A DNA stretch of 64,000 nt from IMG/VR virus record IMGVR_UViG_3300026292_000003, positions 1 to 64,000 of that record, one strand, 5' to 3'. This document shows positions 2,761 through 60,450 of the stretch, in pieces. Numbering within the stretch: position 1 is the stretch's first letter; each line of letters begins with the position of its first letter. The position numbers and the translations under genes are program-made. The notes under the pieces are model-generated. The model was given only the letters and a program-made list of their open reading frames with translations. It was not told the origin of the DNA and made no database searches.

Positions 2761-3204
2761 TTACTTGATTTCAATAGTTTTTGCTTTTTTAGCATCAGGG
2801 ATTATTCTTTCCATAGATACTTTAAGCAATCCATCTTTCAATTCAGCACCTTTAACTTCTACATCGTCAGCTACTGTGAATACTTTACTGAACATACGTT
2901 GTGATATACCTTTGTGCAGTACATCATTTCCATCAGCATCTTTGTTCACTTCCTTCTCTTTACTCTTTATAGTAAGCAAATTATCTTCATAGTTTACTAC
3001 TATATCATCTTTAGAGAAGCCAGCTAATGCTACTTCAATGTCGTAAGTATTGCTACCAGTTTTAACGATATTGTAAGGTGGGTAGTTTACTTGAGGTACT
3101 TGAAACACTTCATTATCAAACATTGATTCAAAGTGATCAAATATGTTATCAAAACCTACAGTTACAGGACGTAACTGATTAAAAATAGATAAATGTTTAT
3201 TCAT
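2761..3204 (-). CDS. hsp20: small heat-shock protein Hsp20/IbpA family
   Basis: NYPPYNI, ALAGF, LHKGISQRMF and GAELKDGLL alpha-crystallin motifs. Confidence 0.95.
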   Translation of the reverse strand: MNKHLSIFNQLRPVTVGFDNIFDHFESMFDNEVFQVPQVNYPPYNIVKTGSNTYDIEVALAGFSKDDIVVNYEDNLLTIKSKEKEVNKDADGNDVLHKGISQRMFSKVFTVADDVEVKGAELKDGLLKVSMERIIPDAKKAKTIEIK

Positions 3205-3210
3205 CTTTAT

Positions 3211-3229
3211 ACTCCTTTATTAAGCAAGT
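3211..3229 (-). promoter_or_regulatory. ROSE-like RNA thermometer hairpin over the hsp20 Shine-Dalgarno
   Basis: ACUUGCUU-AAUA-AAGGAGU: UUGCU with a bulged G paired to AGGA. Confidence 0.65.
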
Positions 3230-3500
3230 TAATTGTTATTAGTAGACCCTAATGGCATCTACAGTATTATTTATCATAACACTATATATAATATAAGCAT
3301 TATTTACAAAAAGTCAAGGGCCAATTTGAATCTTTTTTTAACGTGACCCTACTATATGTGCCTGTAGATACTATGGCACTATACGTATTCGAATCTTTAC
3401 AAAGTTTACAATAGATGGTTGGAAAAATTTTTTAAGCTGACCTTCGGTGAGTCTAGAGGGGTTATGGACACGCAATCCACCCCCTCTAAAATAAATTTAA

Positions 3501-3779
3501 TTAGTAAGTATACTTGATTGACTTCTTCTTACCAACTGTACCATTGATTTTCTCAACAGTAATTCCAAGTTTACCAGCTTCTAATTGAGCAAATACACCT
3601 TGGTTAAGTGTTATACCACTTTTTAAACCTTCGTGAAACAACTGGCTTCTACCTATTTCAGTGTTACCAGCTTGTTTGCTCTCTGCTAAAAACCTTTTGA
3701 TCCACGTTCTAGCAGTCTCTTGTTTGTTCTCTTTCTTAACTTCAACAGTATTTTCTACTGTATTTGTAGTATTTTCCAT
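3501..3779 (-). CDS. hypothetical early protein, possibly DNA-binding
   Basis: AGGAG RBS, sigma70 promoter at 3813-3841, basic C-terminus. Confidence 0.75.
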   Translation of the reverse strand: MENTTNTVENTVEVKKENKQETARTWIKRFLAESKQAGNTEIGRSQLFHEGLKSGITLNQGVFAQLEAGKLGITVEKINGTVGKKKSIKYTY

Positions 3780-24100: not shown

Positions 24101-27100
24101 AGATAATTCAATACCAGGTGCTACACTTAAACTAGTACTATAAGAAAGAATTGGTATACCAGTAAAGTGTTTACCTCTGTCTACCATACTCATTGCTGAT
24201 ATTTTTGTAGCTGTTGTTTTAAATCTTGCTGTACCTATTGTACTTTGATTATCGTCTAGTATATAAAACTCTTCTGAGTCTACTAGGTTTGAACTAGTAG
24301 ATACTTTTATTTCATTAACAACTTTATAAGTTTCACCAGGCATAGTAAAACAAGAACTGTTTATATATTTCTTATCATATGATGAAGCATAGTCTCTAAC
24401 TTTTCCTGGTTGGAAATAATCTGACCAAGCTCTAGCTGGATTTAATTTCAACATAGCATTAACAGTCATAGCTTGACCTAATGCAGATTGTCTCCATTCA
24501 ATCTCTACAGGACCCCAATCACCAAACACAAAGTCTTGAGATGCATCAACATTTGTTGGCGTACCTAAAACATTATGTGGACTTTCTAACTGTCCATTAG
24601 GTTTTACAGGACAATTATTTGTAAAGTCCCAATTACGTCTTGCGTATTTTATATCTTGTTTTTTATTTGGATATGCTTGTGGTGCAACTGTACCTACGTT
24701 TAACGCACCTATTAGTGCCGCACGTTTTGTAGCATCTGTCCAACTATAATACGTATCCCACCAAGTAGGTTTAAACGCATAGCCTAGCATATGCCAAGGT
24801 GTTAAGTGTGGCGTAGCAGTACCAAACAACGTCATGTATGCACCTTTATAATGTCCTGGCAGTTTGTTAGTACCAAACTTACCTCCAACACTTAATGAGC
24901 TATAATTCCAAGTAAATGTATCGTTAACATCATAATAGTTTTCAGTATTAAATGATGTCTTTTTATTTTGTATAGCCCACTTCTCATAAAACTTTTCTAA
25001 ATAATTATCAACGGTTGCTAAATCATACCAAGCACTTATATGATGACTTGGCATATAATCAGTAGGAGTTTTATATTTGTCTTTTATAATGCTATCATCT
25101 CTGTACATTAAATCTTGTGTAACTAGTCCAGCATATATTCTTTTTTCTAAATCAAACAATGCCGCGTGTACAGGATCAAAGTTAGCACCACTTACGTTTG
25201 TAATCTGTCCGTTAATTGTATAAGTAGAACCATCGTGTGTATATAATGTTGATCCAACTACTTGAGGTTGCATACCAAAAGCTAGTCCAAGTTTAACCAT
25301 ACTCTGTGGAACAAAGCATTCACTATCCATTTGATTGTAAACTACTTTAAGTATTGGACTTGTATTTAAATTATCAAGTGATGCGTATGTAAGTTTTAAA
25401 TATATAGTATCACCTATAAAATCATAATCAGTATCTTTTAATAATATTCTTTCTACTTGGTTATTGTTACCATCGTTTTCAGTTAGATATACATACAAGT
25501 GATCTCTAATATTTTGATCACCGTGCATATTAAATTTTGTTTTAAAATCATATATTGTAATATTTGATATAGTAAATGTTTCAGTATCATAGCTGTTACT
25601 ATAAACCATATTAGAATCAATATAAAGTTCTGAATCTTTTTTATTTCTAATAACTTCATTAATTGCTGATTCAGTTAAAAGTTTTATACTAGAATTATTT
25701 GCTCCTACTGAATATAATCTTTTAGCCTGTGCTAAAAATCTTTTTCTAAAAGCATACCATTCGTTAGCTTGTTCGTTAAGTGTTGCAGTTATATTTAAAT
25801 TTGTATCTGAGTAGTTTATATCATGCATTATACTAATGTCAGGGTGTATAAACATAGTACCACCATAGTATGGAGTATGTACAATACTAGCATAATTATT
25901 TTCACCAAACATAGTTCCAGAGTAACCTGGATTGACTACAAGTTTATCTAACCAATGATCAATAGTTTCACTCATAGTAAATGTTTTAATACATTCATTA
26001 TTAGCATTATGTTCTAATGTTTCTGGAAAACTAATATTTGTTGTTGGATTAGTTTTATCATTGCTCACCCAGTTAAAGTCAACTAGGTCACCTTTTGTGA
26101 AAGCACTCTCATCTATTACAGTACTTGTAGCACCAACAGTTACTAATGAGTTAGAAACTTTGTTGCCATTTATTGTTACGTCATAAAATAATCTATCCCA
26201 ATTCTCTGAGATTGACATTGAAGCCATTTCATTTGCGTCTGCAAATATACTAAAGTTATCACCGTCACTGTTTGCTCCTGTTACTATTGTAATTTCTGTT
26301 CCGTTTCTAGTAATGGTTATAGCAGGTATTGGATTAGAGCCTGGATTTTCAATATCAACTTGCCCAACTTTAAATGTAATTGTGTAACCTGTTAAGTTAT
26401 TAATTTTAATTGTTTGGTTAACACCTAATAAATGTCTAGTGTTTTTATGTGATTCATTGTAAGTACCGTTGTTGTTACACTTGGCTAATACAAGCATATT
26501 ACCTTTAACTATTACATTATATTCTTCAACTGGTCTCCAATTATCAGTACCAACTGGTATAGTCAATGGCGTATCAGCAATAGTAATCTCATATTGCTTT
26601 TCTTCTCTAGCACTTGTTAATTCTCCCGACGGTCTGTAAAATGTATGTAAGTTATTTTTAATTTTAATATGGTTATAACCTTCTACCATTTTTGAATAAC
26701 TTTGATCTCTAACTGCGTCGTCGTAACTCTTTTTATATTCTTTAGTTAATAAATAATTTTCAAATTCATATTCAGCACCCTTTGGTGTATCTTTGTAACT
26801 TAATATATGTCCAATTTCTGGATCAACAAAAGTACCTGTTCCAACTTTATATCCAAAAATCTTTTCTCCAGCAAATCCTGTGCCGAGGATAGTTTCTAAA
26901 GGAACGCCATAGTAATCATAAAATCTATACAATGGATATTGATTGGTTTTTATTTTTTGTTGAGCTAATGTAATTGTACTATTTGTATAATAAACATCTG
27001 CATAGTTCCAATCTGCGTAAGCTGTACTTGCTACAGATTCAATATTCATTGTATCGTTTTCAGCTAAAGTTTTTACTACTGTAGGTGTTGTTGAAGTTTT

Positions 27101-28606
27101 CTTATAAACTTTAGTATCACTATTATCAACATAAACATAAGTAGATCCTATTGGAAAGTCAGTTAAACTTTCTCCACTAACTACACCATAGTTAACTTTT
27201 CCTATACTGTTTGGAGTAATATGTTTTGCGTGATTCCATAAATCTAATCCAGTATCATATTCTATAATAGGCCTTTGTGCTATTCTATATTCTTTTAAAA
27301 TTTCTGTAAAATCATATGTAGGAATTAGTTCTTCTACTTTATTAATTGTAGCAAAGTTAACCCATCTGTTTCCTCTACTCCAAGCTGTTTGAAATACGTC
27401 TGCTCTGTCAATAACAATGTAATCTTTTTTAGGATAAGGAACACTACCGTGATCCCATTTGTCATTGTCATCATATTGATCTAGTGCATTAATAAGAGCA
27501 AGTTCATCAGCAGTAATACCTGCAACGTTTGCTAGTGTATATACTCCACCACTAAACGTTGCTTCTACTAATTTTTTAATTGAAACATCACCTGTGGTTG
27601 CATCTACTTGAGTAATGTATATAGATTCATTGTCGCCTTGATTTGTATGTATCCAATCACTATTAAACTTTATTAAAGTTCCTGATAAAAACTGTGTAGG
27701 GTTAGACTTAATACCATTAAATTTAAAACCATCAAATATAGGTAATCTATTTGTATCAGCATTGTAAGCATCAATTACTAATTGAGGTGAGAGGTTTCCA
27801 GCATTGTAATAAGTATTATCTATATTTGGAGATACTCTTACTACTTCACTTTTATCCCAAGTACCAGGATTATCTGATGAATGTTTAACAACATTTCCAT
27901 ATACCTTAACACCATTTTCATCTTTATATAATTCTAATTTTGTTTCTGGGTTGGTTGCTGTTACTAGATAAGTTTTATTTTCTATTTCTGCCGCCCAACC
28001 TGTTCCACTAAATTTTATAAGCATTCCAACTTGTAATACAAAAGAATTATTATCGTCAGTTAGTTTATATGCTGGTATACTTTGCATTTCAATTAATGGA
28101 TTTGATGCAACATTTCCATTGTTATTATATGTAGTAACATACTTACTTTCATATACTGGCATCTCTTCTACCCATCTATAGTTTTTGTAGTTTAAAAATT
28201 TATCAACATTAATAGGTGGACTAAAAGTATGTTTACTTGATGAATACGAAGCATTGTAATTATAAGTTTCAAAGTTTTGATTTATTGAATATGCTATATC
28301 ATCAAATGCAATTTTATTAGTTAATTCGTTATTATCTGAATAAGATACAATAGCAGGTTTTAATTGAGTTTTATTTCTAAGGTTAGTATCAATACTAGGA
28401 GTTACATAAGTATCACTTGATACTGAATGCTTTCCATTTTTACTTCCTACGTAACCATTAACTTGGCCTAGAGGTCCTTTAGAAACCATTTGGTCAAGAG
28501 TACTATCTAGCCAACTCTTATTAATGTTTGTTTGAAAAACATTAGGTAAGAAATTACTAGTTTTAATCTTGTTTACCTTATTTGGGCCTGCTTTCTTTTT
28601 AGCCAT
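18107..28606 (-). CDS. giant baseplate wedge/structural protein (3499 aa)
   Basis: Follows gp6; YINEVKPFHTKI wedge motif; WNSTTSYKKDDLVRHEGQLWKC carbohydrate-binding-like module; T/N-rich beta modules. Confidence 0.75.
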   Translation of the reverse strand: MAKKKAGPNKVNKIKTSNFLPNVFQTNINKSWLDSTLDQMVSKGPLGQVNGYVGSKNGKHSVSSDTYVTPSIDTNLRNKTQLKPAIVSYSDNNELTNKIAFDDIAYSINQNFETYNYNASYSSSKHTFSPPINVDKFLNYKNYRWVEEMPVYESKYVTTYNNNGNVASNPLIEMQSIPAYKLTDDNNSFVLQVGMLIKFSGTGWAAEIENKTYLVTATNPETKLELYKDENGVKVYGNVVKHSSDNPGTWDKSEVVRVSPNIDNTYYNAGNLSPQLVIDAYNADTNRLPIFDGFKFNGIKSNPTQFLSGTLIKFNSDWIHTNQGDNESIYITQVDATTGDVSIKKLVEATFSGGVYTLANVAGITADELALINALDQYDDNDKWDHGSVPYPKKDYIVIDRADVFQTAWSRGNRWVNFATINKVEELIPTYDFTEILKEYRIAQRPIIEYDTGLDLWNHAKHITPNSIGKVNYGVVSGESLTDFPIGSTYVYVDNSDTKVYKKTSTTPTVVKTLAENDTMNIESVASTAYADWNYADVYYTNSTITLAQQKIKTNQYPLYRFYDYYGVPLETILGTGFAGEKIFGYKVGTGTFVDPEIGHILSYKDTPKGAEYEFENYLLTKEYKKSYDDAVRDQSYSKMVEGYNHIKIKNNLHTFYRPSGELTSAREEKQYEITIADTPLTIPVGTDNWRPVEEYNVIVKGNMLVLAKCNNNGTYNESHKNTRHLLGVNQTIKINNLTGYTITFKVGQVDIENPGSNPIPAITITRNGTEITIVTGANSDGDNFSIFADANEMASMSISENWDRLFYDVTINGNKVSNSLVTVGATSTVIDESAFTKGDLVDFNWVSNDKTNPTTNISFPETLEHNANNECIKTFTMSETIDHWLDKLVVNPGYSGTMFGENNYASIVHTPYYGGTMFIHPDISIMHDINYSDTNLNITATLNEQANEWYAFRKRFLAQAKRLYSVGANNSSIKLLTESAINEVIRNKKDSELYIDSNMVYSNSYDTETFTISNITIYDFKTKFNMHGDQNIRDHLYVYLTENDGNNNQVERILLKDTDYDFIGDTIYLKLTYASLDNLNTSPILKVVYNQMDSECFVPQSMVKLGLAFGMQPQVVGSTLYTHDGSTYTINGQITNVSGANFDPVHAALFDLEKRIYAGLVTQDLMYRDDSIIKDKYKTPTDYMPSHHISAWYDLATVDNYLEKFYEKWAIQNKKTSFNTENYYDVNDTFTWNYSSLSVGGKFGTNKLPGHYKGAYMTLFGTATPHLTPWHMLGYAFKPTWWDTYYSWTDATKRAALIGALNVGTVAPQAYPNKKQDIKYARRNWDFTNNCPVKPNGQLESPHNVLGTPTNVDASQDFVFGDWGPVEIEWRQSALGQAMTVNAMLKLNPARAWSDYFQPGKVRDYASSYDKKYINSSCFTMPGETYKVVNEIKVSTSSNLVDSEEFYILDDNQSTIGTARFKTTATKISAMSMVDRGKHFTGIPILSYSTSLSVAPGIELSLKEVSFVANGISQAQHNYFKRKQLDNNQKELYKNLTTKLLQKLEGYSSQHLLSIFGETSYYGDFELGSSDYNISMYEGQSNSFVNASILLITKTADAYKVSGVSDNKREFKFFEPNLGNGGNDYELQTINNATVRRYNKFVTTPSTLEFDTKVSKIQDVYNFIRGYWNYLESKGYTLQFAGDQNAADFVNWTNTAEEKDTYILQIGRRVSYTPPSGYVYPYNTLIYNNNNILDMYSNKIQHSDLSINRQDGTVSIETKEQAFIGSITSATTNFEHALIFENKTALGVDLYDDVKNKRQQRLLIRGQRTQEWNGEKNAPGYLVFGDHIVENFDSAVQAVDDIYRTDVDEFNSAITKSKDLTIGNIDKDWVSGLGLNKNTITNFHQGVIKQKGTKGAIERFGRSTILDGGTTSLSAFEQYMFRQSTLGNDNLQEPFEMEIVSSDIINLPLSIDLSQVDTKKIINDVATTFETLSYDDSSSEILTGGETLTTETKYYISNSSEINVFDSTESYATIPTWNSTTSYKKDDLVRHEGQLWKCSVNFTGLTEVAANIEEIGTVTNPVFPNGTVANIAGTTVTFNDTATEYQDIEAVGTVVSPTFLPSETLIIDGVSIGFSKSQNVTVVTGDAVMRATSGNASFADVTGKQITVNGTLINFDITPADVTESFNADNIAPADITETNTATASQTDFTINQSLSPSTWSVLKVEVDSTIVPTSDYVLNGQVVTINNPTMTGGEAVDITLTHQPLIKTAYTISQALSNSTYSVASVTIDGVLETGWTINGQVLTLNAQPTQNAAVAITLTHIPDQMTTTEIMNAINNASITGLTASIVTTANLLELTFTTTDPNETLTLSAGATNTDLGFPASGKVTAPPTEVQQQSVALNLSDIVSQINDTSNLFSVTASDENSQLKLTSTNTTMSVAGTARTTVGLNESYTATTSSVNVTTRMNSAISQIQSALTSANNTEVTITADANRIKITSTGQSLTLGNTDFNSIAGIATGTLEAAEGTVQNTFDINQFGGAPVDPSLDPATFNILITDDSDFEISDVEGINTKFFGYNVLQVIQNHSPLYSKSVDGTHCGICAGTATSDGNDAEVTTNIDHGLQVGDFVMLLNTTTTPNIDGIHKVTKLGTGSNAGRIFYIDEFIKECGNAVSIMPLVTTRFANHTQRDSALTKSHWNLPTGTLVVSSNNGTINGTFVSTTDAVGLTTVRQTIARPSNADVDSIIIYNHKTNQTKVQLEAYDPMRKIIPGIAEQNLDYSGVNDNAIYNLSTDTNRFIEDDNAWGEEQVGTRWWDTSKVRYYDYDQGSISYKKDMWGKLYPGSEIVVWEWIKSTVAPDDYAESVTSQKEMFGVTATGEAYSVYDATARETLYYYSQEQEYNSNTGTYTDVFYYWVKNKTTINGTRTLSAFDVANIIENPTANGISWFAVLDNETFIIDNVSYYVEDTSTVLQINLVGDKFKSHNEWTLITKDLDTIPEYYIEGMKYNLAGWDKSLRKIPHQTLHRFNKYGDELSIGQTWFNNLTTARRNAIITINKLLEDINLHDEYKDSWNKTLLANSFPRYLWNWKDYTLNTYLGTLNYTATVTDTDKLETDIDKDFHSVVQLPIYDSALKLDRSEIYYYNSDTAKWILVHKKNSTVRFDVDLLSPSDGFDMTPWDSKGWDHTFVSEYWQVLIEALKKDIFVEYHKLKMNKLFFSIVDYTLSSFAQTNWIRKTTYVKIEVDSQIDTTSRTFKKDNLVNAIGYINEVKPFHTKISAVKTNYKVIDETSITVTDTPTHVITLNTQDFTPTFNGTTYVGADSTDIVTGGDFTSTPADTIEAINFLSPYNFNVNADEKRNSFVNIDPLELLRINVQTNATGNTYANTSRTFTHIQDAAGNVKAYALLDAKKSTLTSAIDEDSTDLAIASTTAFDDTGFVYVGGEIIEYAKTDATTLKIMKRAVGQTFIVSADTGDAVVQISNYQLTFANDTVSYNQTGSSLLSTPVSETAQELQDFGKGIEL

Positions 28607-28609
28607 TTA

Positions 28610-31600
28610 TTATGTTCCTGCTCTAATGTTTTCGTCTGTTATATTTTGAATAATGTCAATATCGTTAACACTTACATCTGAAATAATAAGTTCATCGCTG
28701 TTTGGTGTAAATTCAAACATATCACCAAATACACTACCTGCACCTTGTGGTACAATAACAAAACTACTTAACACACCTGCAAGTTTCTTATGCACGTATG
28801 CCGCTAGTTCTGTAAAGTAGAATGTTTCTCCAAAGTCCCAATTTGAAGCATCAAAGAATTCTTTAATAGCCTCAACGGTTTTGTTTTTTAAATCACTGTC
28901 AGTTATATTTGATCCTATAAGTTTAATTACTCTAAATCTTGCCTTTAATGAATCATCTGCGTTTGTACCAAAAAGACATTTGTATCTTACTGGCTTATAA
29001 ACTATAGTATCACTCATTGCTTTCTTTTCACCTATAGATGCAAACAGTTGACCTAGTTCGTAACTTGTTGGTGGTGCTGGCATATTTGTAACTGTACCTG
29101 CTAACCAATTTTTATATTCTGTATCGTATGCTGTAGTTAATGCAAATACATCAATAACATTTGTAAAACTTGGATCAACAACTTGATTGTCAGAAGCAAT
29201 ATGCTCCCATTCAAAGTTTAGGTTTTCTTTACCTCTGTAAAAATTGTCACCAATAGATATGTTTTCAGTTCCTACTGTATTATAAAATACATCTGGATCA
29301 TCTGGTCTACTATCTGCATTACCATCAATTAGAACTGTTCTATAAGTGTTTGTTGCTATTTGATCATAACCATATACATAAAACTTTCCTAGTTTAGAAA
29401 TGTTATTATTTAAAACACCCAATGCTTGTATACTATCTCGTTTTGCTTTTTTAGTAAACGAGCTAATTTCGTTTTCATTTTGAATGTTACCAAGTTTAAC
29501 TGCATTACTATTAAAATTAAATCTTAAAGTTCTTAAGTAAATATCATATTGTTGATTAACATAATTAAAATATATTGACCAACTATCATCTGATAAATTA
29601 AAGTCTGTAGGGAAAACAGTACTAGTACTAAATGCACTTGGTGTAGTATCAACTTCCCAACTCTTGTTCACATAATTATATTTTACACTAAATGATTTTT
29701 TAGCATCAAGGTAAGTTATAATAATATCTCTTTCTCTATTGCTAAAGTTTCTTGATAGTGCAGGGTATATAATATCTATTGTACTGTTTGATGGAATTTC
29801 AGCATCAAGAATAATTGATCCTGTACCATCGTTTTGTACGCCAGTTGGTTCACCAGCATTTGTTCCTGTACCTTCAATACCAAGTCCGTAATTGAATACA
29901 TCTACTACCTTTGCCCATTTACTACCACTTGTTGTAGTAAACTTAATTAAAGCACCAGGCGTAATATATTGCATATATGTAGATACTGTATTACCTACTC
30001 TAACAATAGAATTAGTATTGTCTGTTAGATATCCAGTTTTAACACCACTTACTGTTTGACTTGGACTTTGCCATGTCATGCCATCAGTTACGTAACTATG
30101 TTGTGTTTTTAATCCAATAAATGCATTTCTATATTTTGTGTAATATAAATTTATATACTCATCATTGTTAATAATATCTTTTACAAACTTTTCAAATGTT
30201 TGACTTGAGTTATATGTACCACTAGTTGATGATGTAGATAATTTTTCTTCTTGATATAATCTTGCATCATTTCCTTGTAAGTATAAATTACTATATTCGC
30301 CAGTAGGGTCAATAAATTTTGAATATCTACTGTGTCCACTAAATGTTCTGTTTATGCTTTTTACTTTTACTACTCCGCCTGTGTTGTTAGCTAAAATAGT
30401 ATTGTAGTCTTGAGCAGTAATCATTCTGTCTTGACTTGCATAATTCTTTGGTGCGTTTTCTCTTATACTATCTAACGATTCACTTGAAGTAGCATTTGTT
30501 ATTGCTTGTTTTAATTGTAAAGTAAACACCGCTGTATATGTGTTACCATCTTGTCCTGTATAGTTTACATTAATTTTCTTGTTAGTTAAATCATCTGGTC
30601 TAAGAACGTATGTTGTATTCTCACTAGATCTATACCAAACTCTAATTGTATCTTTTGGAATATTACCAAAAGTTCTATCAGGAAATAAAATTGATACTTG
30701 ATTATTATCTCTAGTCTTAACACTAAAGATATCTCTGATTCCAGAAGCTAAATTGTTATATACTATATTACTATTAACATCTTTAACTTTAGTCCATTCT
30801 TTAACTACGTTTCCTGTAGCATTTACATTTTGTACAAAACAATCTGTGTTGTTAATGTTAGCAACATTAATATCAATAACGTTACTATCAATAGGGTCTG
30901 CTATTGGAAAATCTTGATATAATAAGTCACCTTGTTTAACACCAAAGAAGAAACCAGTGTTAGCACTACTAATTCCTCTACCATCATTTTTGAAATACAT
31001 TCCAAAATTAGAAGATGAGTTAGGAGATTTTTCTTTGAATGTTAAATTAGTTTCATCGTAGTCACTGCTAACAATATTAAATGTTTTTGTAGAACCTGTT
31101 ACAGTACCTTCTATATCAAACTTAATTTGGTTTGGTGTGTTGTTTAAATCATAAAAATCTGTTTTAATATTATTAAGTACTACACTTTTATTTGGGCTAC
31201 CATATTGGTTACTATTTTGTAGTACTGCATTTATTATAGTAATAAAGTCATCTAAATTATTAACATCATTAGTGACTTCATATTTAATTTCTGTTCCGCC
31301 TAAACTTGTTCCGGCACTACCTATAACAGCTTCGTTTGTTTTAACACCAACAACTTTCATTTCACCATACGCAGGCACATTACGTCTTGGAGAGTATCCT
31401 AAGAATTCAGCTAGTTTAAAAACTGATTCTTGTTTTTCTGCTGTTGTTAAAAAATTATTTCTAGCATTGAGGTCTACTCTATATGCTAGGTTGTGTCCAA
31501 ACTGAGCTACTACATCAAGTAGTGATACAAATTCAGCTGATTCAATCCAGTCGTTGTAATTTTCTGGATACGTATTGCTGACATAATCAACCATAGCAGT

Positions 31601-41506: not shown

Positions 41507-43282
41507 ATGTTAAAAATTAAAAACATCACCGTAAAAAACTTTATGAGTGTGGGTAATGTCACACAGGCTGTTCATTTTGATAAACACGGCCTTACACTTG
41601 TACTAGGTAATAACATTGATTTAGGTGGAGATGGTTCACGTAATGGTACAGGTAAAACAACAATTATTAATGCGTTAAGTTATGCGTTATATGGCAATGC
41701 ACTTTATAATATTAAAAAAGATAATCTAGTTAACAAAACTAACAACAAAGCAATGATGGTTACTGTTGACTTTGAAAAAGATGGTATAGCATATAGAATC
41801 GAAAGAGGGCGTAAGCCAAATACATTTAGATTTTTAGTAAACAATCAAGATACAACAGAAGGTATCACTGATGAGATGCAAGGCGAGGGTAGACAAAGCC
41901 AAGCAGTAATTGAACAACACTTGGGTATGACTCATACAATGTTTAAACACATTGTGGCTCTTAACACATATACAGATCCTTTTTTAAGTATGAGAGCAAA
42001 CGATCAACGTGAAATGATTGAACAGTTATTAGGTATTACAAAGTTAAGTGAGAAAGCAGACATACTAAAAGAACTTTCAAAGAATACCAGAGACAAAATT
42101 ACAGAAGAAACATATAAAATAAAAGGTATAGAAGAAGCTAACGAAAGAATTAATAGCAGTATTAAAGATTTAGAACGTAGACAAACACAATGGACACTAA
42201 AACGTGATCAACGTTTAGATGAATCTAAACAAGAAATACAAGTGTTAGAACATATTGATATTGATAAAGAATTACAAGCTCATGAAGATTTTACAAAGTT
42301 TACAGAAAAGAGAAATCAAATTGATACACTAAACGCAGAAATTGCTAAACTTGTTACTGCTATTGAACGTGAAACAAAACGTAGAGACAAAGCACAACAA
42401 GATTTAGATCATGCAAAAGATCATAAGTGTTATGCGTGTGGGCAAGAAATACACGACGAGCAACACGATAAAATTGTTACTGCAAAAACTGAAGCAGTAA
42501 ATGAATGTCAAGAGATTATTAACGAAGACGAAAAGTTATTAAAAGATTACAAAGCAGGATTAGAACAAATTGGGGAACTTGGTGATTCTCCTAGAACGGA
42601 ATATAATAGTTTACAAGAAGCATATGAACATCAAAATAAAATTAAAGAATTGAAATATGATTTAACAAATGCAGAAAACGAAGTTAATCCTTATGCAGAA
42701 CAAATTGAATCACTTAAAGCAACAGGATTACAAGAAGTTGATTGGGCAGAAGTAAACAGATTAACAGAATTAAAAGAACACCAAGACTTTTTAATGAAGC
42801 TACTTACAAACAAAGATAGTTTCATACGTAAAAAGATTATTGAACAAAACTTGCAGTTCTTAAACACAAGGCTTGAATATTATATTACAAGACTTGGACT
42901 ACCACACGAAGTACAGTTTCAAAGTGACTTAACAGTTACAATTACACAACTAGGTCAAGACTTAGACTTTGATAATTTAAGTAGAGGTGAACGTAATAGA
43001 CTTATACTTGGATTAAGCTGGAGTTTTAGAGATGTATTTGAAAGTATGAATCATCCTATTAACTTATTATGTATTGACGAACTTGTTGATAGTGGTATGG
43101 ATACTATCGGAGTAGAGAGTGCATTAGGTATTCTTAAAAAGATGGAAAGAGATAGAGGCAAGAATGTATTACTAGTTTCTCATAGAGATGAGTTAGTAGG
43201 TAGAGTAGGTAGTGTGCTTCAGGTTGTAAAAGAAAATGGGTTTACTACATTTAATACCGAGATAGAAGTAATTGACGCATAA
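41507..43282 (+). CDS. gp46: recombination ATPase gp46 (Rad50/SbcC)
   Basis: NGTGKTT Walker A, CYACGQ zinc hook, LSRGE signature, IDELVD Walker B. Confidence 0.95.
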   Translation: MLKIKNITVKNFMSVGNVTQAVHFDKHGLTLVLGNNIDLGGDGSRNGTGKTTIINALSYALYGNALYNIKKDNLVNKTNNKAMMVTVDFEKDGIAYRIERGRKPNTFRFLVNNQDTTEGITDEMQGEGRQSQAVIEQHLGMTHTMFKHIVALNTYTDPFLSMRANDQREMIEQLLGITKLSEKADILKELSKNTRDKITEETYKIKGIEEANERINSSIKDLERRQTQWTLKRDQRLDESKQEIQVLEHIDIDKELQAHEDFTKFTEKRNQIDTLNAEIAKLVTAIERETKRRDKAQQDLDHAKDHKCYACGQEIHDEQHDKIVTAKTEAVNECQEIINEDEKLLKDYKAGLEQIGELGDSPRTEYNSLQEAYEHQNKIKELKYDLTNAENEVNPYAEQIESLKATGLQEVDWAEVNRLTELKEHQDFLMKLLTNKDSFIRKKIIEQNLQFLNTRLEYYITRLGLPHEVQFQSDLTVTITQLGQDLDFDNLSRGERNRLILGLSWSFRDVFESMNHPINLLCIDELVDSGMDTIGVESALGILKKMERDRGKNVLLVSHRDELVGRVGSVLQVVKENGFTTFNTEIEVIDA

Positions 43283-43707
43283 TGATAGATTGGACTTACA
43301 AAGGTGAAGTGGTAACAGAAATTCCAACAGGCGTTGAAGGATTTGTATATTTAATTACAAATACTACAAATAATAAAAAGTATATAGGTAAGAAGTTAGC
43401 AAAGTTTAAAACAACTAAACCACCTCTTAAAGGTAAAAAGAATAAAAGACGTGGAACAAAAGAAAGTGATTGGAGGGACTATTGGGGTTCTTCAGATCAT
43501 TTAAATGCTGATGTATTAAAGCTGGGTGAAGATAAGTTTACCAAAGAAATACTGCATTATTGTCCTAGTAAAGGCGTGTTAAGCTATATGGAAGCAAAAG
43601 AACAGTTTGATCGTAAAGTACTAGAAACAGACGAATACTACAATGGAATCATTAATGTAAGAGTAGGAAGTTCAAAAATTCTTACAGAACATCTGAAAAA
43701 AGGTTGA
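43282..43707 (+). CDS. small GIY-YIG nuclease
   Basis: GFVYLITN..KKYIGKK, YWGSS, conserved E and YYN; catalytic domain only. Confidence 0.85.
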   Translation: MIDWTYKGEVVTEIPTGVEGFVYLITNTTNNKKYIGKKLAKFKTTKPPLKGKKNKRRGTKESDWRDYWGSSDHLNADVLKLGEDKFTKEILHYCPSKGVLSYMEAKEQFDRKVLETDEYYNGIINVRVGSSKILTEHLKKG

Positions 43708-43732
43708 CAATGTTATCAATCTTTGTTATATT
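43704..43732 (+). promoter_or_regulatory. sigma70 promoter driving a non-coding region
   Basis: TTGACA-17nt-TATATT with TG extended -10, overlapping the GIY-YIG stop codon. Confidence 0.8.
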
Positions 43733-43738
43733 ATTGAA

Positions 43739-44260
43739 AATTGGGGTTTTTAACGCATAAACCAGCGAATAATTAAAACATCATATAATTACAAGTAACA
43801 ATTCCCAATAAAAAGCAAAACAGACTTAAAGTCAGACAATTACCGGCAAAACATTTCAATACTAATATAGGCATCAAGGCTCCGTTTGGTCGTCATAAGT
43901 CGACTCACCTTGAGGTCACGTTTCACGTGATCGGATTCTGGTGTTGCCAAAAAACGTCAATGCACTGATTTGACAAATCAAAAAGATCAAGCTCTCCTGA
44001 CACTTGGAACTTGAGGATAGTCCGAAGTTGATAATATAGCAACGGATGTTTCTGCGTTAGTAAAGCAGTATGTAATAAGGGTACCGCGTAACCGCCCTTC
44101 CTAGGTGCTAATCTAGGTTTACTATATTATTGTGTGTATGCTTCTCGGTGAAGAACATTATTTACACTTGGCCTGCGGAAGGCGAAGTGTGAATAAAACA
44201 TCTGGTGAAGTAGCAAGTATTCTACTAACATAAATACTATTACAAAATTTTGCTTTTCTA
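43739..44260 (+). ncRNA. putative large structured non-coding RNA (~520 nt)
   Basis: ORF-free; own promoter; long-range helices 43811-20/44248-57, 44031-39/44122-30, 44043-51/44196-204 and many local hairpins. Confidence 0.55.
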
Positions 44261-44351
44261 GACAGCGATAGCTAATACATCGAGTTTGACGCAGTCAAAC
44301 GAAGATGGTGATGTCGTAGACATCAATTACCTGACAAGCAAGAAAGAAACA

Positions 44352-44810
44352 ATGAACTTCGACGACTTTATTAACAAATTCATACAATGGACTGAAGATA
44401 CGATAGAAAAGCCTCGTTCTGACTTAGATGCCCAACCTATATGTCCATTTGCACGTAAAGCCAGATTGCAAAAGAAAATCCAGTTCTTGGATGCACGTAA
44501 ATCCCTAGATGAAATAAAAACGTTTGATAAAGAAAACTTTGAGATTGGTATTGCCTGGTTAGGTGATATAGATGACATTAGTCCTGTAGAAAAATTTTGC
44601 GAAGAACATATGGAAGCCAATCCTGACTTATTACTTTTTACAAGTACACGTAATAGTGGACACTTTGCAAAAAACTTTACGGATTGTGTGTTTGTTCAAT
44701 TAAAAGGTGATATACTTAAGAAACGTAAGTATTTAAAAACTACTAATTATTATGATAATTGGCCTGCAGAGTATTATAAATTAATTACCGGCGACCAGAA
44801 GCCTGTTTAG
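44352..44810 (+). CDS. hypothetical protein (CPFA motif, DUF1415-like)
   Basis: W..D.IE..PICPFAR; ATG 44352 preferred over TTG 44286; late promoter CATAAATA at 44229-44236. Confidence 0.65.
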   Translation: MNFDDFINKFIQWTEDTIEKPRSDLDAQPICPFARKARLQKKIQFLDARKSLDEIKTFDKENFEIGIAWLGDIDDISPVEKFCEEHMEANPDLLLFTSTRNSGHFAKNFTDCVFVQLKGDILKKRKYLKTTNYYDNWPAEYYKLITGDQKPV

Positions 44811-56950: not shown

Positions 56951-57025
56951 ATCAGCTTGGTGCTAATGGTAACATAGCGGTCTCCAAAACCGAAGACGAG
57001 GGTTCGATTCCTTCAGCTGGTGCCA
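56951..57025 (+). tRNA. trnW: tRNA-Trp (anticodon CCA)
   Basis: Acceptor ATCAGCT/AGCTGGT, anticodon loop CTCCAAA, GGTTCGATTCC T arm, encoded CCA end. Confidence 0.92.
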
Positions 57026-59152: not shown

Positions 59153-59204
59153 ATCGTTCATCCTGTAGATTTCGGACGGAAGTAAGCGAAAGCTGAAGGA
59201 ACGC
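59153..59204 (+). ncRNA. glutamine riboswitch (glnA motif) aptamer 1
   Basis: AUCGUUCA-UCC..GGA-CGGAAGUA-AGC GAAA GCU-GAAGGAACGC matches the glnA three-way junction with E-loop. Confidence 0.85.
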
Positions 59205-59210
59205 ATTATC

Positions 59211-59259
59211 ATCGTTCATCTCGTAAGAGACGGAAGTAGGTAATGAACCGAAGGAACGC
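59211..59259 (+). ncRNA. glutamine riboswitch (glnA motif) aptamer 2
   Basis: AUCGUUCA-UCUC GUAA GAGA-CGGAAGUA-GGU..ACC-GAAGGAACGC. Confidence 0.85.
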
Positions 59260-59284
59260 ACTTAACTGTAAAAAGGAGAGTGTC

Positions 59285-59844: not shown

Positions 59845-60450
59845 ATGTCATCACATATTAATCCAGACGCAGGGCGTCTAATTATAGAAAGTACACAAAA
59901 TCTAGACTTGACTGCAAGTCAAGCTAATATGCCTACAGGCGCATCTTTGTATAACAAAGGTGGAATGTTTAATGCTGGGCACCTGTACGTTCAAGGGACC
60001 CTTGTTGTTAATGGTGATATTATTACTTTAGGTAACAGTGGTGGGTCACTTACCTTGAACAGTAATATTAGTAGTGATGTATTACCAGATACAACTTCAG
60101 GTATTCAATACAACATTGGTAGTACAACCAAACCTTGGAATATTGGGTATTTTGAAAAAATAGTATCAAGTCAGAATCCAGCAACAGCAACAACAGATGT
60201 ACCATCAACAAAAGGAACAGTTCTTTTAGATGGTTCAACAAATACATCTTTAGCACTAGCCAATGGAACTGTAGGTGAACGTAAAACAATTATAGTCACA
60301 GCAACTCCATCAGGTACAATCACAGTTACTCCAGCAACAGCATTAGGATATACTAGTATATCATTTGCGGCCGTTGGCGATACTACTGAATTAGTTTACA
60401 CATCAAACGGCTGGTCTATTCTATCTATCTTCCGTGCAAACGTTACGTAA
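59845..60450 (+). CDS. virion structural/fibre-associated protein
   Basis: T/S/G-rich beta protein; late promoter CATAAATA at about 59781. Confidence 0.65.
   Translation: MSSHINPDAGRLIIESTQNLDLTASQANMPTGASLYNKGGMFNAGHLYVQGTLVVNGDIITLGNSGGSLTLNSNISSDVLPDTTSGIQYNIGSTTKPWNIGYFEKIVSSQNPATATTDVPSTKGTVLLDGSTNTSLALANGTVGERKTIIVTATPSGTITVTPATALGYTSISFAAVGDTTELVYTSNGWSILSIFRANVT

What the first reader, a model, noticed from the sequence alone, without database searches (positions are those of the whole stretch)
43282..44330. ~520-nt promoter-driven, heavily structured non-coding RNA directly behind a minimal GIY-YIG nuclease
Seen: in a gene-dense genome, ~640 bp after gp47-gp46-GIY-YIG carry no credible ORF. 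A consensus sigma70 promoter (43704-43732) overlaps the nuclease stop codon. The region has long-range complementarity: AAAAGCAAAA 43811-20 / TTTTGCTTTT 44248-57; ATAATATAG 44031-39 / CTATATTAT 44122-30; CGGATGTTT 44043-51 / AAACATCTG 44196-204. The last two cross, implying a pseudoknot or a switch. Local stems include TCAAGG/CCTTGA, GTCACGT/ACGTGAT, AAGGG/CCCTT, CCTAG/CTAGG and TTATTTACACTT/AAGTGTGAATAA. I do not recognise the family. Known: GIY-YIG homing endonucleases such as I-TevI carry a C-terminal DNA-binding domain; this 141-aa protein has only the catalytic domain plus a K/R-rich insert (KFKTTKPPLKGKKNKRRGTK). Inference: either (a) a nuclease-RNA ribonucleoprotein, or (b) a long pre-primer RNA for R-loop replication initiation (ColE1 RNA II or T4 origin style).
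Basis: partly seen in the sequence, partly recalled or inferred. Interest (0 to 1): 0.82.

Follow-up and report, generated by a model that had tools for sequence, protein, structure and literature searches.

The report
Conserved pseudoknotted phage RNA behind nuclease gene
The gene-free stretch encodes a real, strongly conserved, pseudoknotted non-coding RNA of about 355 nt, found in many uncultured marine T4-like phages always just behind a small nuclease gene; it extends an orphan RNA motif (Polynucleobacter-1), and its function is still unknown.

Summary
Window 43708-44351 has no credible ORF, and a near-consensus sigma-70 promoter sits at 43704-43732. The + strand at about 43862-44215 encodes a structured RNA.

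- **Conservation:** homologues occur in at least 190 viral-contig loci (87 distinct sequences).
- **Structure:** 58 core base pairs are 96.7% canonical. 36 pairs show compensatory changes, against 81.5% canonical in shuffles and 32-47% in slid controls. G-U outnumbers A-C 589 to 28.
- **Fold:** a clade-specific 5' domain plus a universal core of about 220 nt, with one well-supported pseudoknot and a loop-loop contact.
only one of the three long-range pairings is real.
- **Family:** no Rfam family matches the window. In distant relatives at the same locus the 5' domain is Rfam's Polynucleobacter-1 motif (RF01718), which was noted in 2010 to lie downstream of PSSM2_218-like genes, the same family as this GIY-YIG gene.
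- **Neighbouring gene:** the gene directly upstream is always a small nuclease, either GIY-YIG or PDDEXK. The two swap between near-identical RNAs, and both families also occur without the RNA.

A dedicated nuclease-RNA particle and an R-loop primer are therefore not supported. The best reading is an autonomous folded RNA gene, a new variant of an orphan known motif.

The parts
43282..43707 (+). 141-aa SegE-like GIY-YIG nuclease ORF. It has the catalytic domain only, with no C-terminal DNA-binding domain.
   Evidence: ORF. Pfam PF19835 matches at E 1e-34 over residues 4-124. It falls in PHROG 447. It is 78% aa identical to a Melnitz protein at another locus. No PDB relative was found by sequence.
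43704..43732 (+). Sigma-70-type promoter with an extended -10 (TTGACA-17-TG-TATATT), overlapping the GIY-YIG stop codon and reading into the RNA.
   Evidence: 11 of 12 positions match. The same promoter lies 125-183 nt upstream of the extracted RNA in 21 distinct relatives of the nearest clade. It is absent in PDDEXK-type alleles, so it travels with the GIY-YIG cassette.
43733..43861 (+). Leader between the promoter and the conserved RNA. It is conserved only among GIY-YIG-type alleles of the nearest clades and is not part of the universal RNA.
   Evidence: Upstream sequences are compared. PDDEXK alleles go from the stop codon straight into the CTAAYAYA repeats.
43862..43985 (+). Clade-specific 5' domain of the RNA. 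It comprises CUAAUAUAGG (its AYAYA pairs with 44131-35), hairpin 43888-43905, helix CACC/GGUG at 43906-09/43940-43 enclosing hairpin 43914-43932, and hairpin 43966-43980.
   Evidence: Alignments are. In one search, CACC/GGUG changes to CGCU/AGCG in L294. The 43914-32 hairpin is present in all 42 distinct sequences with this domain, with varied stems. The pair 43867:44133 is 97% canonical and covaries. Other clades carry different 5' domains, one of which is RF01718.
43986..44135 (+). Universal core, part 1.
- Hairpin 43987-91/44010-14 plus 43995-97/44006-08.
- Helix 44016-17/44051-52 plus 44020-23/44044-47, crossing pseudoknot 44032-37/44124-29.
- Hairpin 44053-55/44065-67.
- Helix 44068-70/44120-22.
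- Hairpin 44077-82/44094-99, with the invariant loop ACCGCGUAACC.
- Hairpin 44100-05/44112-17.
- Loop-loop contact GUUR/YAAC at 44056-59/44089-92.
   Evidence: RNAalifold finds 31 of 58 pairs with compensatory changes. The top mutual-information pairs are all Watson-Crick.
44136..44160 (+). Variable hairpin carrying copy 1 of a direct repeat (GGTGAAG, 44147-44153).
   Evidence: The stem sequence varies between clades.
44161..44193 (+). Long terminal hairpin: 44161-69/44185-93 plus 44170-73/44181-84. Its 3' strand, consensus GGCUAAGUGUGA, is the most conserved sequence block.
   Evidence: Pairs are 94-100% canonical except the outermost, 44161:44193 (77%). Compensatory changes occur at 44161:44193, 44164:44190 and 44173:44181. 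Also.
44194..44215 (+). 3' tail carrying copy 2 of the direct repeat (GGTGAAG, 44204-44210). This is the likely 3' end region of the RNA.
   Evidence: Both repeat copies change together between clades: the mean shared word is 7.3 nt against 4.9 in shuffles. In distant relatives an intrinsic terminator follows copy 2. Sequence conservation ends here.
44230..44236 (+). ATAAATA, a T4-type late-promoter-like element for the downstream gene. It marks the 3' limit of the RNA gene.
   Evidence: It is conserved in relatives (alignment columns 497-504). The motif is depleted in the window (18 found, 46 expected), and most copies lie just upstream of ORFs in the right orientation. That TATAAATA is the T4 late promoter is established knowledge.
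44263..44324 (+). Separate conserved element downstream of the late promoter: AGCGATAGC, then hairpins 44284-44300 and 44310-44324.
   Evidence: An AGCGWWAGC block plus hairpin recurs in relatives of both RNA subfamilies. It was not analysed further.
44352..44810 (+). 152-aa ORF of unknown function, the late gene downstream. It is present only in part of the clade.
   Evidence: ORF. It has no Pfam family and a weak match to PHROG 10325. Relatives are 36-92% aa identical. In other relatives it is absent, and the RNA is followed by the convergent baseplate gene.

Best explanation
Window ~43862-44215 (+) is a gene for a compactly folded, pseudoknotted non-coding RNA. It has a lineage-specific 5' domain and a universal core of about 220 nt.

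**Where it sits.** The RNA is a conserved syntenic element of a large clade of uncultured marine T4-like myoviruses, whose nearest cultured kin are PA5oct, Phosso and Atu_ph07. The gene order is late sigma factor (gp55-like), one unknown ORF, gp47, gp46, (variable ORFs), small nuclease, RNA, followed by late structural genes.

**How it is transcribed (inferred).** It is transcribed with, or just behind, the nuclease gene. In the window's clade a sigma-70 extended -10 promoter, carried at the 3' end of the GIY-YIG cassette, reads into it.

**How it works (inferred, not shown).** It acts as a folded RNA in its own right, most likely in trans as a binding platform for a protein or small ligand. 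It is not a guide or partner specific to the GIY-YIG protein. It is not a 5' leader either, because in many relatives nothing follows it on that strand.

**The upstream slot.** The nuclease slot is an exchangeable cassette, either a SegE-like GIY-YIG or a PDDEXK_15 nuclease. The strict adjacency probably reflects conserved gene order and transcriptional dependence, and possibly homing next to an invariant RNA gene.

**Family.** It belongs to a wider modular RNA superfamily, one of whose 5'-domain variants is Rfam's orphan Polynucleobacter-1 motif.
For: **Reality and strand**
- The RNA was found in 71 of 80 gp46-anchored loci; the other 9 were not examined, and most hold only a few hundred bases downstream of gp46.
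- This gives 87 distinct sequences.
- 58 core pairs are 96.7% canonical. 36 show compensatory changes. Shuffles give 81.5% (maximum 82.4%) and slid controls 32-47%. G-U cells number 589 against 28 A-C cells.
- The RNA is far better conserved than the protein gene downstream.

**Expression**
- Assembled marine metatranscriptome contigs span the RNA.
- The RNA alone holds 0.55-0.58 of its sampled words in 14 or more RNA runs, against 0.13-0.17 for the whole 1.5-kb locus.
- The promoter is conserved in the nearest clade.

**Independence from one nuclease**
- 69 distinct loci carry GIY-YIG and 17 carry PDDEXK. At least 7 switches are needed on the RNA tree, and both types occur behind near-identical RNAs.
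- GIY-YIG homologues occur without the RNA.
- PDDEXK homologues next to gp46 in PA5oct and Phosso have no RNA.

**Not a leader**
- In many relatives the RNA is followed by a convergent baseplate gene.

**Superfamily link**
- RF01718 scores 62-108 bits directly behind the GIY-YIG stop in L300, L312, L316 and L330.
- The window's core HMM hits the sequence 3' of that motif in L316 and L330.
- The 5' domain is shared with loci whose gp46 is only about 50% identical.
- Weinberg 2010 noted the same gene association (PMC2864571 supplement).
Against: - No function was demonstrated. 'Acts in trans' is an inference from position and fold only.
- The adjacency is very tight: 86 of 86 distinct loci, plus 26 of 26 PDDEXK-anchored loci, have a nuclease gene directly 5' with no gene in between. 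ORFs come and go elsewhere in the region. That could mean functional coupling rather than mere synteny.
- The metatranscriptome evidence comes from unstranded contigs. Depth over the RNA is similar to the flanks, and DNA carry-over is not excluded.
- The transcript ends are not mapped.
- Outside the nearest clade no promoter was recognised.
- Homology between the main 'family B' cores and the window's core was not established by sequence.
Confidence: 0.6

Rival explanations
1. **Nuclease-coupled RNA.** The RNA works together with whichever small nuclease is encoded just upstream. It could be a co-transcribed regulator or antidote, for example a branched-nucleic-acid mimic that holds a junction-cutting nuclease in check. 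It could also be a cofactor or a cis element controlling nuclease expression.
For: - A nuclease ORF lies directly 5' on the same strand in 86 of 86 distinct loci and in 26 of 26 PDDEXK-anchored loci, with nothing ever inserted in between. Genes do vary between gp46 and the nuclease, and 3' of the RNA.
- In PDDEXK alleles and in distant GIY alleles the RNA starts within a few to about 80 nt of the stop codon.
- The same association was reported for Polynucleobacter-1.
- PDDEXK_15 homologues in PA5oct and Phosso are annotated as Holliday-junction resolvases. Both nuclease types could therefore share a substrate geometry rather than a fold; this step is inference.
Against: - Two unrelated folds alternate behind near-identical RNAs.
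- Both nuclease families occur without the RNA.
- All cases lie at one syntenic locus, so adjacency may be inherited gene order.
- In the window's clade the RNA has a promoter of its own.
Confidence: 0.2
2. **Homing-site explanation of the linkage.** The upstream nucleases are free-standing homing endonucleases that compete for one insertion site. They use the invariant RNA gene, or its 5' edge, as their cleavage target. The RNA's own function is unrelated to them.
For: - The GIY-YIG belongs to the SegE family.
- It is 72% nt and 78% aa identical to a gene at a different locus in phage Melnitz.
- Alleles switch between near-identical backgrounds, with the break right at the start of the RNA's upstream repeats.
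- A homologue sits 174 nt upstream of a tRNA gene in cyanophage S-CAM8.
- T4 SegB lies in, and targets, the tRNA gene cluster (own knowledge).
Against: - No allele without a nuclease gene was seen (0 of 86).
- The protein lacks the C-terminal DNA-binding domain of Seg enzymes.
- The GIY-YIG is conserved as well as, or better than, gp46 across the clade.
- It is near-universal in cyanomyoviruses. This looks like a housekeeping gene.
- The PDDEXK gene is syntenic with gp46 in cultured relatives.
Confidence: 0.25
3. **Replication pre-primer.** A long transcript from the promoter forms an R-loop that primes DNA synthesis, in the style of ColE1 RNA II or a T4 origin.
For: - A strong promoter reads into a long untranslated region.
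- The cultured relatives PA5oct and Phosso also have long unannotated gaps of about 0.66 and 1 kb near gp46 and the resolvase gene.
Against: - Selection preserves a compact fold with a pseudoknot and a loop-loop contact, through compensatory changes. It does not preserve a DNA-unwinding element.
- The promoter is confined to one clade.
- The gaps in PA5oct and Phosso are not homologous to the RNA.
- No iterons or AT-rich unwinding element were identified next to the RNA in the window.
Confidence: 0.05
4. **Cis-acting 3' element.** The RNA is an operon-end insulator or stabiliser, or a conformational switch. It would control read-through from the early/middle gp47-gp46-nuclease unit into the late genes.
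For: - It sits at the boundary between the replication/recombination genes and late-promoter-driven structural genes.
- A co-varying direct repeat flanks the terminal hairpin, which could allow two alternative pairings.
- In distant relatives an intrinsic terminator follows the second repeat copy.
Against: - A pseudoknotted core of about 220 nt with many invariant unpaired bases is far more than a terminator or stabiliser needs.
- In many relatives only a convergent gene follows.
- No terminator follows the RNA in the window.
Confidence: 0.1

Closest known systems
Polynucleobacter-1 RNA motif (Rfam RF01718; Weinberg et al. 2010, PMC2864571)
   Same: - Same genomic setting: directly downstream of PSSM2_218-like small GIY-YIG genes.
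- In L300, L312, L316 and L330 the motif (62-108 bits) occupies the position of the window's 5' domain, at the same gp46-GIY-RNA locus.
- The sequence 3' of the motif in L316 and L330 is hit by the window's core HMM.
- Both are orphan RNAs of unknown function known mainly from aquatic metagenomes.
   Different: - The window scores nothing against RF01718, even at E<=10. Its 5' domain is a different module, with at most a loose topological resemblance to the motif's 3' half.
- The Rfam model (141 nt) covers only a 5' module. The universal core of about 220 nt described here is not in Rfam.
- The 2010 description found no copy in a sequenced phage and did not note the PDDEXK alternative.
Large ornate phage-associated RNAs of unknown function (GOLLD, ROOL; PMC12286853)
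   Same: - Long, intricately folded RNAs carried by phages or prophages.
- They have many conserved unpaired bases and tertiary contacts, and no assigned function.
- A 4-bp loop-loop contact (GUUR/YAAC) here could in principle act between molecules, as in those assemblies. This is speculation.
   Different: - No match to their covariance models.
- This RNA is smaller: 220-355 nt against about 600-800 nt.
- The gene context differs: these RNAs are reported near tRNA genes (own knowledge), whereas this one follows a small nuclease gene.
- Multimerisation is untested.
Stable-RNA genes of T4-like phages flanked by Seg-type GIY-YIG endonuclease genes (T4 tRNA cluster with segB; own knowledge)
   Same: - A Seg-family GIY-YIG gene lies next to a highly conserved RNA gene.
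- Cyanophage S-CAM8 has a homologue of the window's protein directly upstream of tRNA-Arg.
   Different: - The RNA here is not a tRNA.
- The protein lacks a DNA-binding domain.
- The nuclease slot is never empty.
HEARO / omega RNAs of IscB and TnpB (RNA encoded beside a nuclease gene and guiding it)
   Same: A structured RNA of a few hundred nt sits immediately beside a nuclease ORF.
   Different: - The nucleases here are 141-183 aa GIY-YIG or PDDEXK proteins, not RuvC/HNH.
- The RNA stays while the nuclease is exchanged.
- No guide-like hypervariable end within clades was seen.
- No covariance-model match.
ColE1 RNA II / T4 origin transcripts
   Same: A long untranslated transcript driven by a strong promoter.
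   Different: - The conserved feature here is a compact pseudoknotted fold kept by compensatory change.
- No origin features were found.
- The promoter is clade-specific.

Membership tests
Polynucleobacter-1 RNA (RF01718) | Covariance-model score at or above the gathering threshold (37 bits) | tested here: not met
   No RF01718 hit on window 43200-44600, even at E<=10 or at gathering threshold on the whole window. The threshold is met in relatives L300 (107.8), L312 (99.7), L316 (64.1) and L330 (62.2).
Polynucleobacter-1 RNA (RF01718) | Location downstream of genes homologous to P-SSM2 locus PSSM2_218 | tested here: met
   The window's GIY-YIG hits PSSM2_218 (40% aa, E 8e-17). The association is stated in the PMC2864571 supplement.
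Polynucleobacter-1 RNA (RF01718) | Homology to the RNAs that carry the motif (shared 3' core) | tested here: met
   The window-family core HMM hits the region 3' of the motif in L316 (E 8.6e-5) and L330 (1.2e-4), and also L268 (1.6e-6), in a 49-kb search. Shared blocks are visible. The E-values refer to a small database.
Any other Rfam 15 family (including tmRNA, RNase P RNA, group I/II introns, 6S, riboswitches, GOLLD, ROOL, HEARO, IMES) | Covariance-model match | tested here: not met
   There was no relevant match on the window region or on 17 loci with divergent members. Only chance-level snoRNA and miRNA hits appeared.
tmRNA | tRNA-like domain and tag reading frame | tested here: not met
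   ARAGORN finds no tmRNA in the window. By inspection there is no T-arm consensus, and no tag frame lies upstream of the UAAUAA at 44073-78.
Group I intron carrying a homing endonuclease gene | Interrupts a host gene, with flanking exons that are joined by splicing | tested here: not met
   gp46 is complete (98% coverage against PA5oct) and ends at its own stop codon. In many relatives the RNA is followed only by a convergent gene. There is no Intron_gpI hit.
RNA-guided nuclease systems (IscB/TnpB with omega RNA) | RuvC (and HNH) nuclease, with the RNA inherited together with it | tested here: not met
   The proteins are SegE_GIY-YIG or PDDEXK_15. The nuclease type switches at least 7 times on the RNA tree, including between near-identical RNAs.
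ColE1 RNA II / T4-origin R-loop primer | The transcript forms a persistent RNA-DNA hybrid at a replication origin | not testable with these tools
   No origin-mapping data are available. Indirect evidence against: selection acts on the RNA fold and the promoter is clade-specific.
Seg-type free-standing homing endonuclease (the upstream ORF) | N-terminal GIY-YIG catalytic domain | tested here: met
   PF19835 SegE_GIY-YIG matches at E 1e-34 over the full profile.
Seg-type free-standing homing endonuclease (the upstream ORF) | C-terminal DNA-binding domain that gives site specificity | tested here: not met
   The protein is 141 aa. The domain covers residues 4-124 and only 17 residues follow.
Seg-type free-standing homing endonuclease (the upstream ORF) | Sporadic, mobile distribution among related genomes | tested here: inconclusive
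   Signs of mobility: allele swaps with PDDEXK and a close homologue at another locus in Melnitz. Against: the slot is never empty, and the family is near-universal in cyanomyoviruses.

The most novel reading that the evidence does not exclude
The RNA and the gene in front of it form one functional module that has survived replacement of the nuclease by an unrelated fold. In this reading the RNA controls, or is used by, a junction-cutting nuclease. It could be a co-transcribed branched-nucleic-acid decoy or antidote that times a DNA-debranching or host-DNA-degrading nuclease during infection. It would be an RNA partner defined by the enzyme's substrate geometry rather than by its fold.
Probability: 0.15. 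Interest if true: 0.85.

Novelty: new variant of a known kind. Interest (0 to 1): 0.65.

Why it matters
- **It redefines an orphan motif.** Polynucleobacter-1, a 141-nt motif from 2010, turns out to be one interchangeable 5' module of a much larger modular RNA. That RNA has a universal pseudoknotted core and is carried by a widespread group of marine T4-like phages.
- **It is a good target for structure and function work.** RNAs with this many covarying helices, tertiary contacts and invariant unpaired bases have usually turned out to be ribozymes, ligand sensors or scaffolds of RNA-protein machines. Probing, cryo-EM and binding-partner searches are all feasible.
- **Its context poses a concrete question.** It always sits behind a swappable small nuclease gene, at the early/late boundary of the genome. 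That raises the question of how phages time nucleases, or how selfish nuclease genes exploit RNA genes.
- **Comparative data are already in hand.** There are 87 distinct sequences plus distant subfamilies to design experiments from.

Tried and rejected
- **Rfam.** Gathering and permissive thresholds on the window and on 30 related loci gave nothing for the window. Only RF01718 appeared, in four distant relatives.
- **tRNA and tmRNA.** ARAGORN found none in the region, and no tRNAs next to 59 GIY-YIG loci.
- **Cultured phages.** blastn of the RNA found only chance matches. nhmmer on PA5oct, Phosso and Melnitz found no homologue.
- **Bacterial genomes.** A 22-base gapped pattern gave 21 hits. 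Only one was real: a 3-kb contig binned in a Flavobacteriales MAG. No cellular homologue was found at that sensitivity.
- **RNase P resemblance** (GAGGAUAGUCC at about 44014). Rejected, because AGUCC pairs locally and covaries instead of being invariant.
- **tmRNA tag frame** before UAAUAA. Rejected by inspection.
- **CsrA-type GGA sites** in the repeat. Rejected, because some clades have UGUCAAG.
- **Pairing of the repeat or tail with the 5' domain.** No consistent partner was found (mean z about 0).
- **CTAAYAYA as a general promoter.** It is not enriched in the window (34 found, 23.6 expected).
- **PA5oct gp337 as a homologue of the 152-aa ORF.** It is not.
- **PDDEXK gene elsewhere in the window.** None was found. 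A close-relative scan did not find one on long GIY-type contigs, which is weak evidence.
- **Iterative HMM search.** It linked only part of the distant 'family B' loci to the window's core.
- **Not done.** Covariation statistics were computed by script instead.

Full report
**1. What is in the sequence**

Between the stop codon of a 141-aa ORF (43282-43707) and the ATG of the next ORF (44352) there is no ORF longer than 39 aa on either strand. This is the second-longest ORF-free gap in a densely coding window of 33.5% G+C.

A TTGACA-17-TATATT promoter with a TG extension lies at 43704-43732. G+C rises to 0.38-0.45 over about 43850-44200. The + strand folds better than shuffles (z -3.5), and the - strand does not (z -1.0).

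The neighbours are:
- a late sigma factor (gp55-like);
- gp47 and gp46;
- a T4-type baseplate gene on the opposite strand.

gp46 and the portal protein are about 50% identical to those of Pseudomonas phage PA5oct, Sinorhizobium phage Phosso and Agrobacterium phage Atu_ph07. The window's own contig is a 221-kb IMG/VR contig.

**2. It is a conserved RNA gene**

- Anchoring on gp46 gave 80 related viral contigs. 71 carry a homologue of the gap sequence, always on the gp46 strand. The other 9 were not examined, and most hold only a few hundred bases downstream of gp46.
- Together these give 87 distinct sequences.
- Within one sub-clade the RNA is almost invariant, while the protein gene downstream is peppered with substitutions.
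- RNAalifold on 41 sequences finds 58 pairs, 31 of them with compensatory double changes.
- The top mutual-information column pairs are nearly all Watson-Crick partners.

For a hand-curated core structure over the 87 sequences:

| Measure | Observed | Shuffled 3' partners | Partners slid 1-3 columns |
|---|---|---|---|
| Canonical cells (58 pairs) | 96.7% | 81.5% (max 82.4%) | 32-47% |
| Pairs with compensatory changes | 36 | 26 (max 30) | 13-17 |

G-U cells outnumber A-C cells 589 to 28, so the + strand is the folded strand.

**3. Anatomy, in window coordinates**

*5' domain, 43862-43985 (clade-specific)*
- CUAAUAUAGG, whose AYAYA pairs with 44131-35.
- Hairpin 43888-905.
- Helix CACC/GGUG at 43906-09/43940-43, enclosing hairpin 43914-32.
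- Hairpin 43966-80.

*Universal core*
- Hairpin 43987-91/44010-14 plus 43995-97/44006-08.
- Helix 44016-17/44051-52 plus 44020-23/44044-47, crossed by pseudoknot 44032-37/44124-29.
- Small hairpin 44053-55/44065-67.
- Helix 44068-70/44120-22.
- Hairpin 44077-82/44094-99, with an invariant 11-nt loop.
- Hairpin 44100-05/44112-17.
- A covarying 4-bp loop-loop contact, GUUR/YAAC, at 44056-59/44089-92.

*3' part*
- A variable hairpin (44136-60).
- The long hairpin 44161-93.
- A short tail.

A 7-13-nt direct repeat flanks the long hairpin. In the window it is GGTGAAG at 44147-53 and 44204-10. Its sequence differs between clades, but the two copies change together. This is unexplained. A partner in the 5' domain was sought and not found.

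Position 44190 covaries both with 44164, its partner in the hairpin, and with 44000 in a distant loop. A second pseudoknot or a switch is therefore possible but unproven.

**4. Boundaries and expression**

Sequence conservation stops near 44215. A conserved ATAAATA follows at 44230-36. That motif is depleted in the window (18 found, 46 expected) and sits upstream of many ORFs in the right orientation. This fits the T4-type late promoter (established knowledge). It starts the downstream transcription unit.

The sigma-70 promoter is conserved in 21 distinct relatives of the nearest clade. It belongs to the 3' end of the GIY-YIG cassette. PDDEXK-type alleles lack it and run from the stop codon straight into the RNA's upstream CTAAYAYA repeats.

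Marine metatranscriptome assemblies contain contigs spanning the RNA, for example 43584-44268, 43367-44257 and 43822-44435. The RNA alone holds 0.55-0.58 of its sampled words in 14 or more RNA runs, against 0.13-0.17 for the 1.5-kb locus. These contigs are unstranded, their depth is similar to the flanks, and DNA carry-over cannot be excluded. Transcription is therefore likely but not proven.

**5. The gene in front**

The 141-aa protein is a full-length match to Pfam SegE_GIY-YIG (E 1e-34). The K/R-rich stretch lies inside that domain, and no DNA-binding domain follows.

| Sample | Gene directly 5' of the RNA, same strand |
|---|---|
| 86 distinct loci with enough upstream sequence | GIY-YIG in 69, PDDEXK_15 (PF24608) in 17, none in 0 |
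| 26 loci fetched through the PDDEXK protein, with enough sequence | all 26 have the RNA downstream |

- Other ORFs come and go between gp46 and the nuclease, and 3' of the RNA.
- On the RNA tree the nuclease type changes at least 7 times. Both types occur behind near-identical RNAs.
- The PDDEXK protein is 38% identical to genes that sit next to gp46 in PA5oct and Phosso. These are annotated as Holliday-junction resolvases, and there is no RNA there.
- The GIY-YIG family is very widespread: 787 cultured-phage records, mostly cyanomyoviruses.
- It occurs at another locus in Methylophilales phage Melnitz (78% aa) without the RNA.
- In P-SSM2 it is locus PSSM2_218.
- In S-CAM8 it lies directly upstream of tRNA-Arg.

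**6. A wider superfamily and the link to a known motif**

Of the 80 best viral-contig loci fetched through the GIY-YIG protein, 9 had too little downstream sequence. The other 71 divide as follows:

| Group | Loci | Feature |
|---|---|---|
| Window-type RNA | 12 | Detected by the core HMM |
| Related non-coding region ('family B') | 38 | Same locus; gp46 46-72% identical |
| A further variant | 3 | Same locus |
| No RNA | 18 | 12 of these have the GIY gene inverted between the baseplate gene and gp46 |

- The distant loci carry the same kinds of 5' domain as the window family (alignment). They also have the repeat-hairpin-repeat arrangement, followed by an intrinsic terminator.
- In four of them the 5' domain is Rfam RF01718, the Polynucleobacter-1 RNA, at 62-108 bits against a gathering score of 37. 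It starts 22-50 nt after the GIY-YIG stop.
- The window family's core HMM hits the sequence 3' of that motif in L316 and L330, and other distant loci on iteration.
- The 2010 description states that most Polynucleobacter-1 RNAs lie downstream of genes with possible homology to PSSM2_218. It also states that the 3' half is not always detected, and that no copy was found in a sequenced phage (PMC2864571 supplement).
- No other paper in the library mentions the motif.
- The window itself does not score against RF01718.

**7. What it is not**

- No other Rfam family matches the window or divergent members.
- It is not a tRNA or tmRNA.
- It is not an intron. gp46 is complete, and in many relatives nothing follows the RNA on its strand.
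- It does not fit an omega-RNA-type guide. The nucleases are of the wrong classes, and the RNA stays while the nuclease is exchanged.
- No cellular homologue was found in 185,579 species genomes at the pattern's sensitivity. The one true hit is a 3-kb contig binned in a Flavobacteriales MAG.

**8. Most likely mechanism, and what is inference**

*Shown:*
- This is a + strand RNA gene under strong selection for a compact pseudoknotted fold.
- It has modular 5' domains.
- It occupies a fixed place behind a swappable nuclease gene.

*Inferred:*
- It acts as a folded RNA in trans, as a platform for a protein or ligand, or possibly as a catalyst. The reasoning is that it is terminal in its transcription unit in many genomes, is indifferent to which nuclease precedes it, and has many invariant unpaired bases.
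- The linkage to the nuclease slot is most simply inherited gene order plus dependence on transcription from upstream.
- Homing of selfish nuclease genes next to an invariant RNA gene, and genuine functional coupling, remain live alternatives.
- The R-loop primer idea has no support.

**9. Novelty**

The RNA is a new variant and a large extension of an orphan known motif. Its function remains unknown.

**Limits of this analysis**
- No stranded read evidence.
- No mapped transcript ends.
- No covariance model or R-scape test.
- The homology of the main distant subfamily's core is unproven.

Noticed in passing
window 59153-59207 and 59211-59262 (+): Two tandem glutamine riboswitch aptamers (RF01739, 61 and 66 bits) lie in the longest ORF-free gap, upstream of the 201-aa ORF at 59845-60450.
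   Followed up: no
window 56951-57025 (+): A single tRNA-Trp(CCA) gene.
   Followed up: no
window 18107-28606 (-): A very large ORF of 3,499 aa within the structural gene block.
   Followed up: no
window-wide, e.g. 3268, 15401, 18082, 32097, 38589, 44230, 45887, 45910, 49911, 57234, 59782: ATAAATA is strongly depleted (18 found, 46 expected). Most copies lie just upstream of ORFs in the matching orientation, as expected for T4-type late promoters.
   Followed up: partly
window 44147-44153 and 44204-44210; same positions in 87 relatives and in distant loci such as L273 and L309: A direct repeat flanks the terminal hairpin. Its two copies change together between clades (GGUGAAG, UGUCAAG, GGGAAAUAG, AGGAAAUAGUUA, ACAUGAAG and others). 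No partner or function was found.
   Followed up: partly
Upstream of the RNA in relatives, e.g. L071, L057, L069 (CTAAYAYA x3-4) and L110, L311 (ACAGACACCAAGTCA x3); window 43862-69 and 43822-36: Short tandem motifs precede the RNA: CTAAYAYA with a period of 11-12, and ACAGACAYMAAGTCA. CTAAYAYA is not enriched elsewhere in the window.
   Followed up: partly
window 44263-44324; relatives: A second conserved non-coding element lies after the late promoter (or after the terminator in distant relatives). It is an AGCGWWAGC block followed by one or two hairpins, upstream of the next gene.
   Followed up: no
L001 (Methylophilales phage Melnitz, record 30449-30889): A gene 72% nt and 78% aa identical to the window's GIY-YIG sits after the ribonucleotide reductase genes, in a phage of a different family and without the RNA. 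This suggests recent transfer of the gene.
   Followed up: partly
L225 (Synechococcus phage S-CAM8, locus 2950-3661): A homologue of the small GIY-YIG gene lies 174 nt upstream of a tRNA-Arg gene. Many cyanophage records annotate this family as 'NAD synthetase', which looks like a propagated misannotation.
   Followed up: no
L201 7868-8530 (PA5oct) and L202 7414-8427 (Phosso): Unannotated gaps of about 0.66 kb and 1 kb lie near gp46 and the PDDEXK 'resolvase' gene in the nearest cultured relatives. Neither is homologous to the window's RNA by nhmmer.
   Followed up: partly
L274, L275, L279, L281, L282, L284, L289 and others: In 12 related contigs the GIY-YIG gene is inverted, co-oriented with the baseplate gene and convergent with gp46. 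No RNA follows it there.
   Followed up: no
L203 1137-1358 (-), contig JAPKCA010000155.1: The only true hit in the species-genome collection is a 3-kb contig binned in an Antarctic Flavobacteriales MAG. It is probably a phage fragment, and gives only a weak hint about the host.
   Followed up: no
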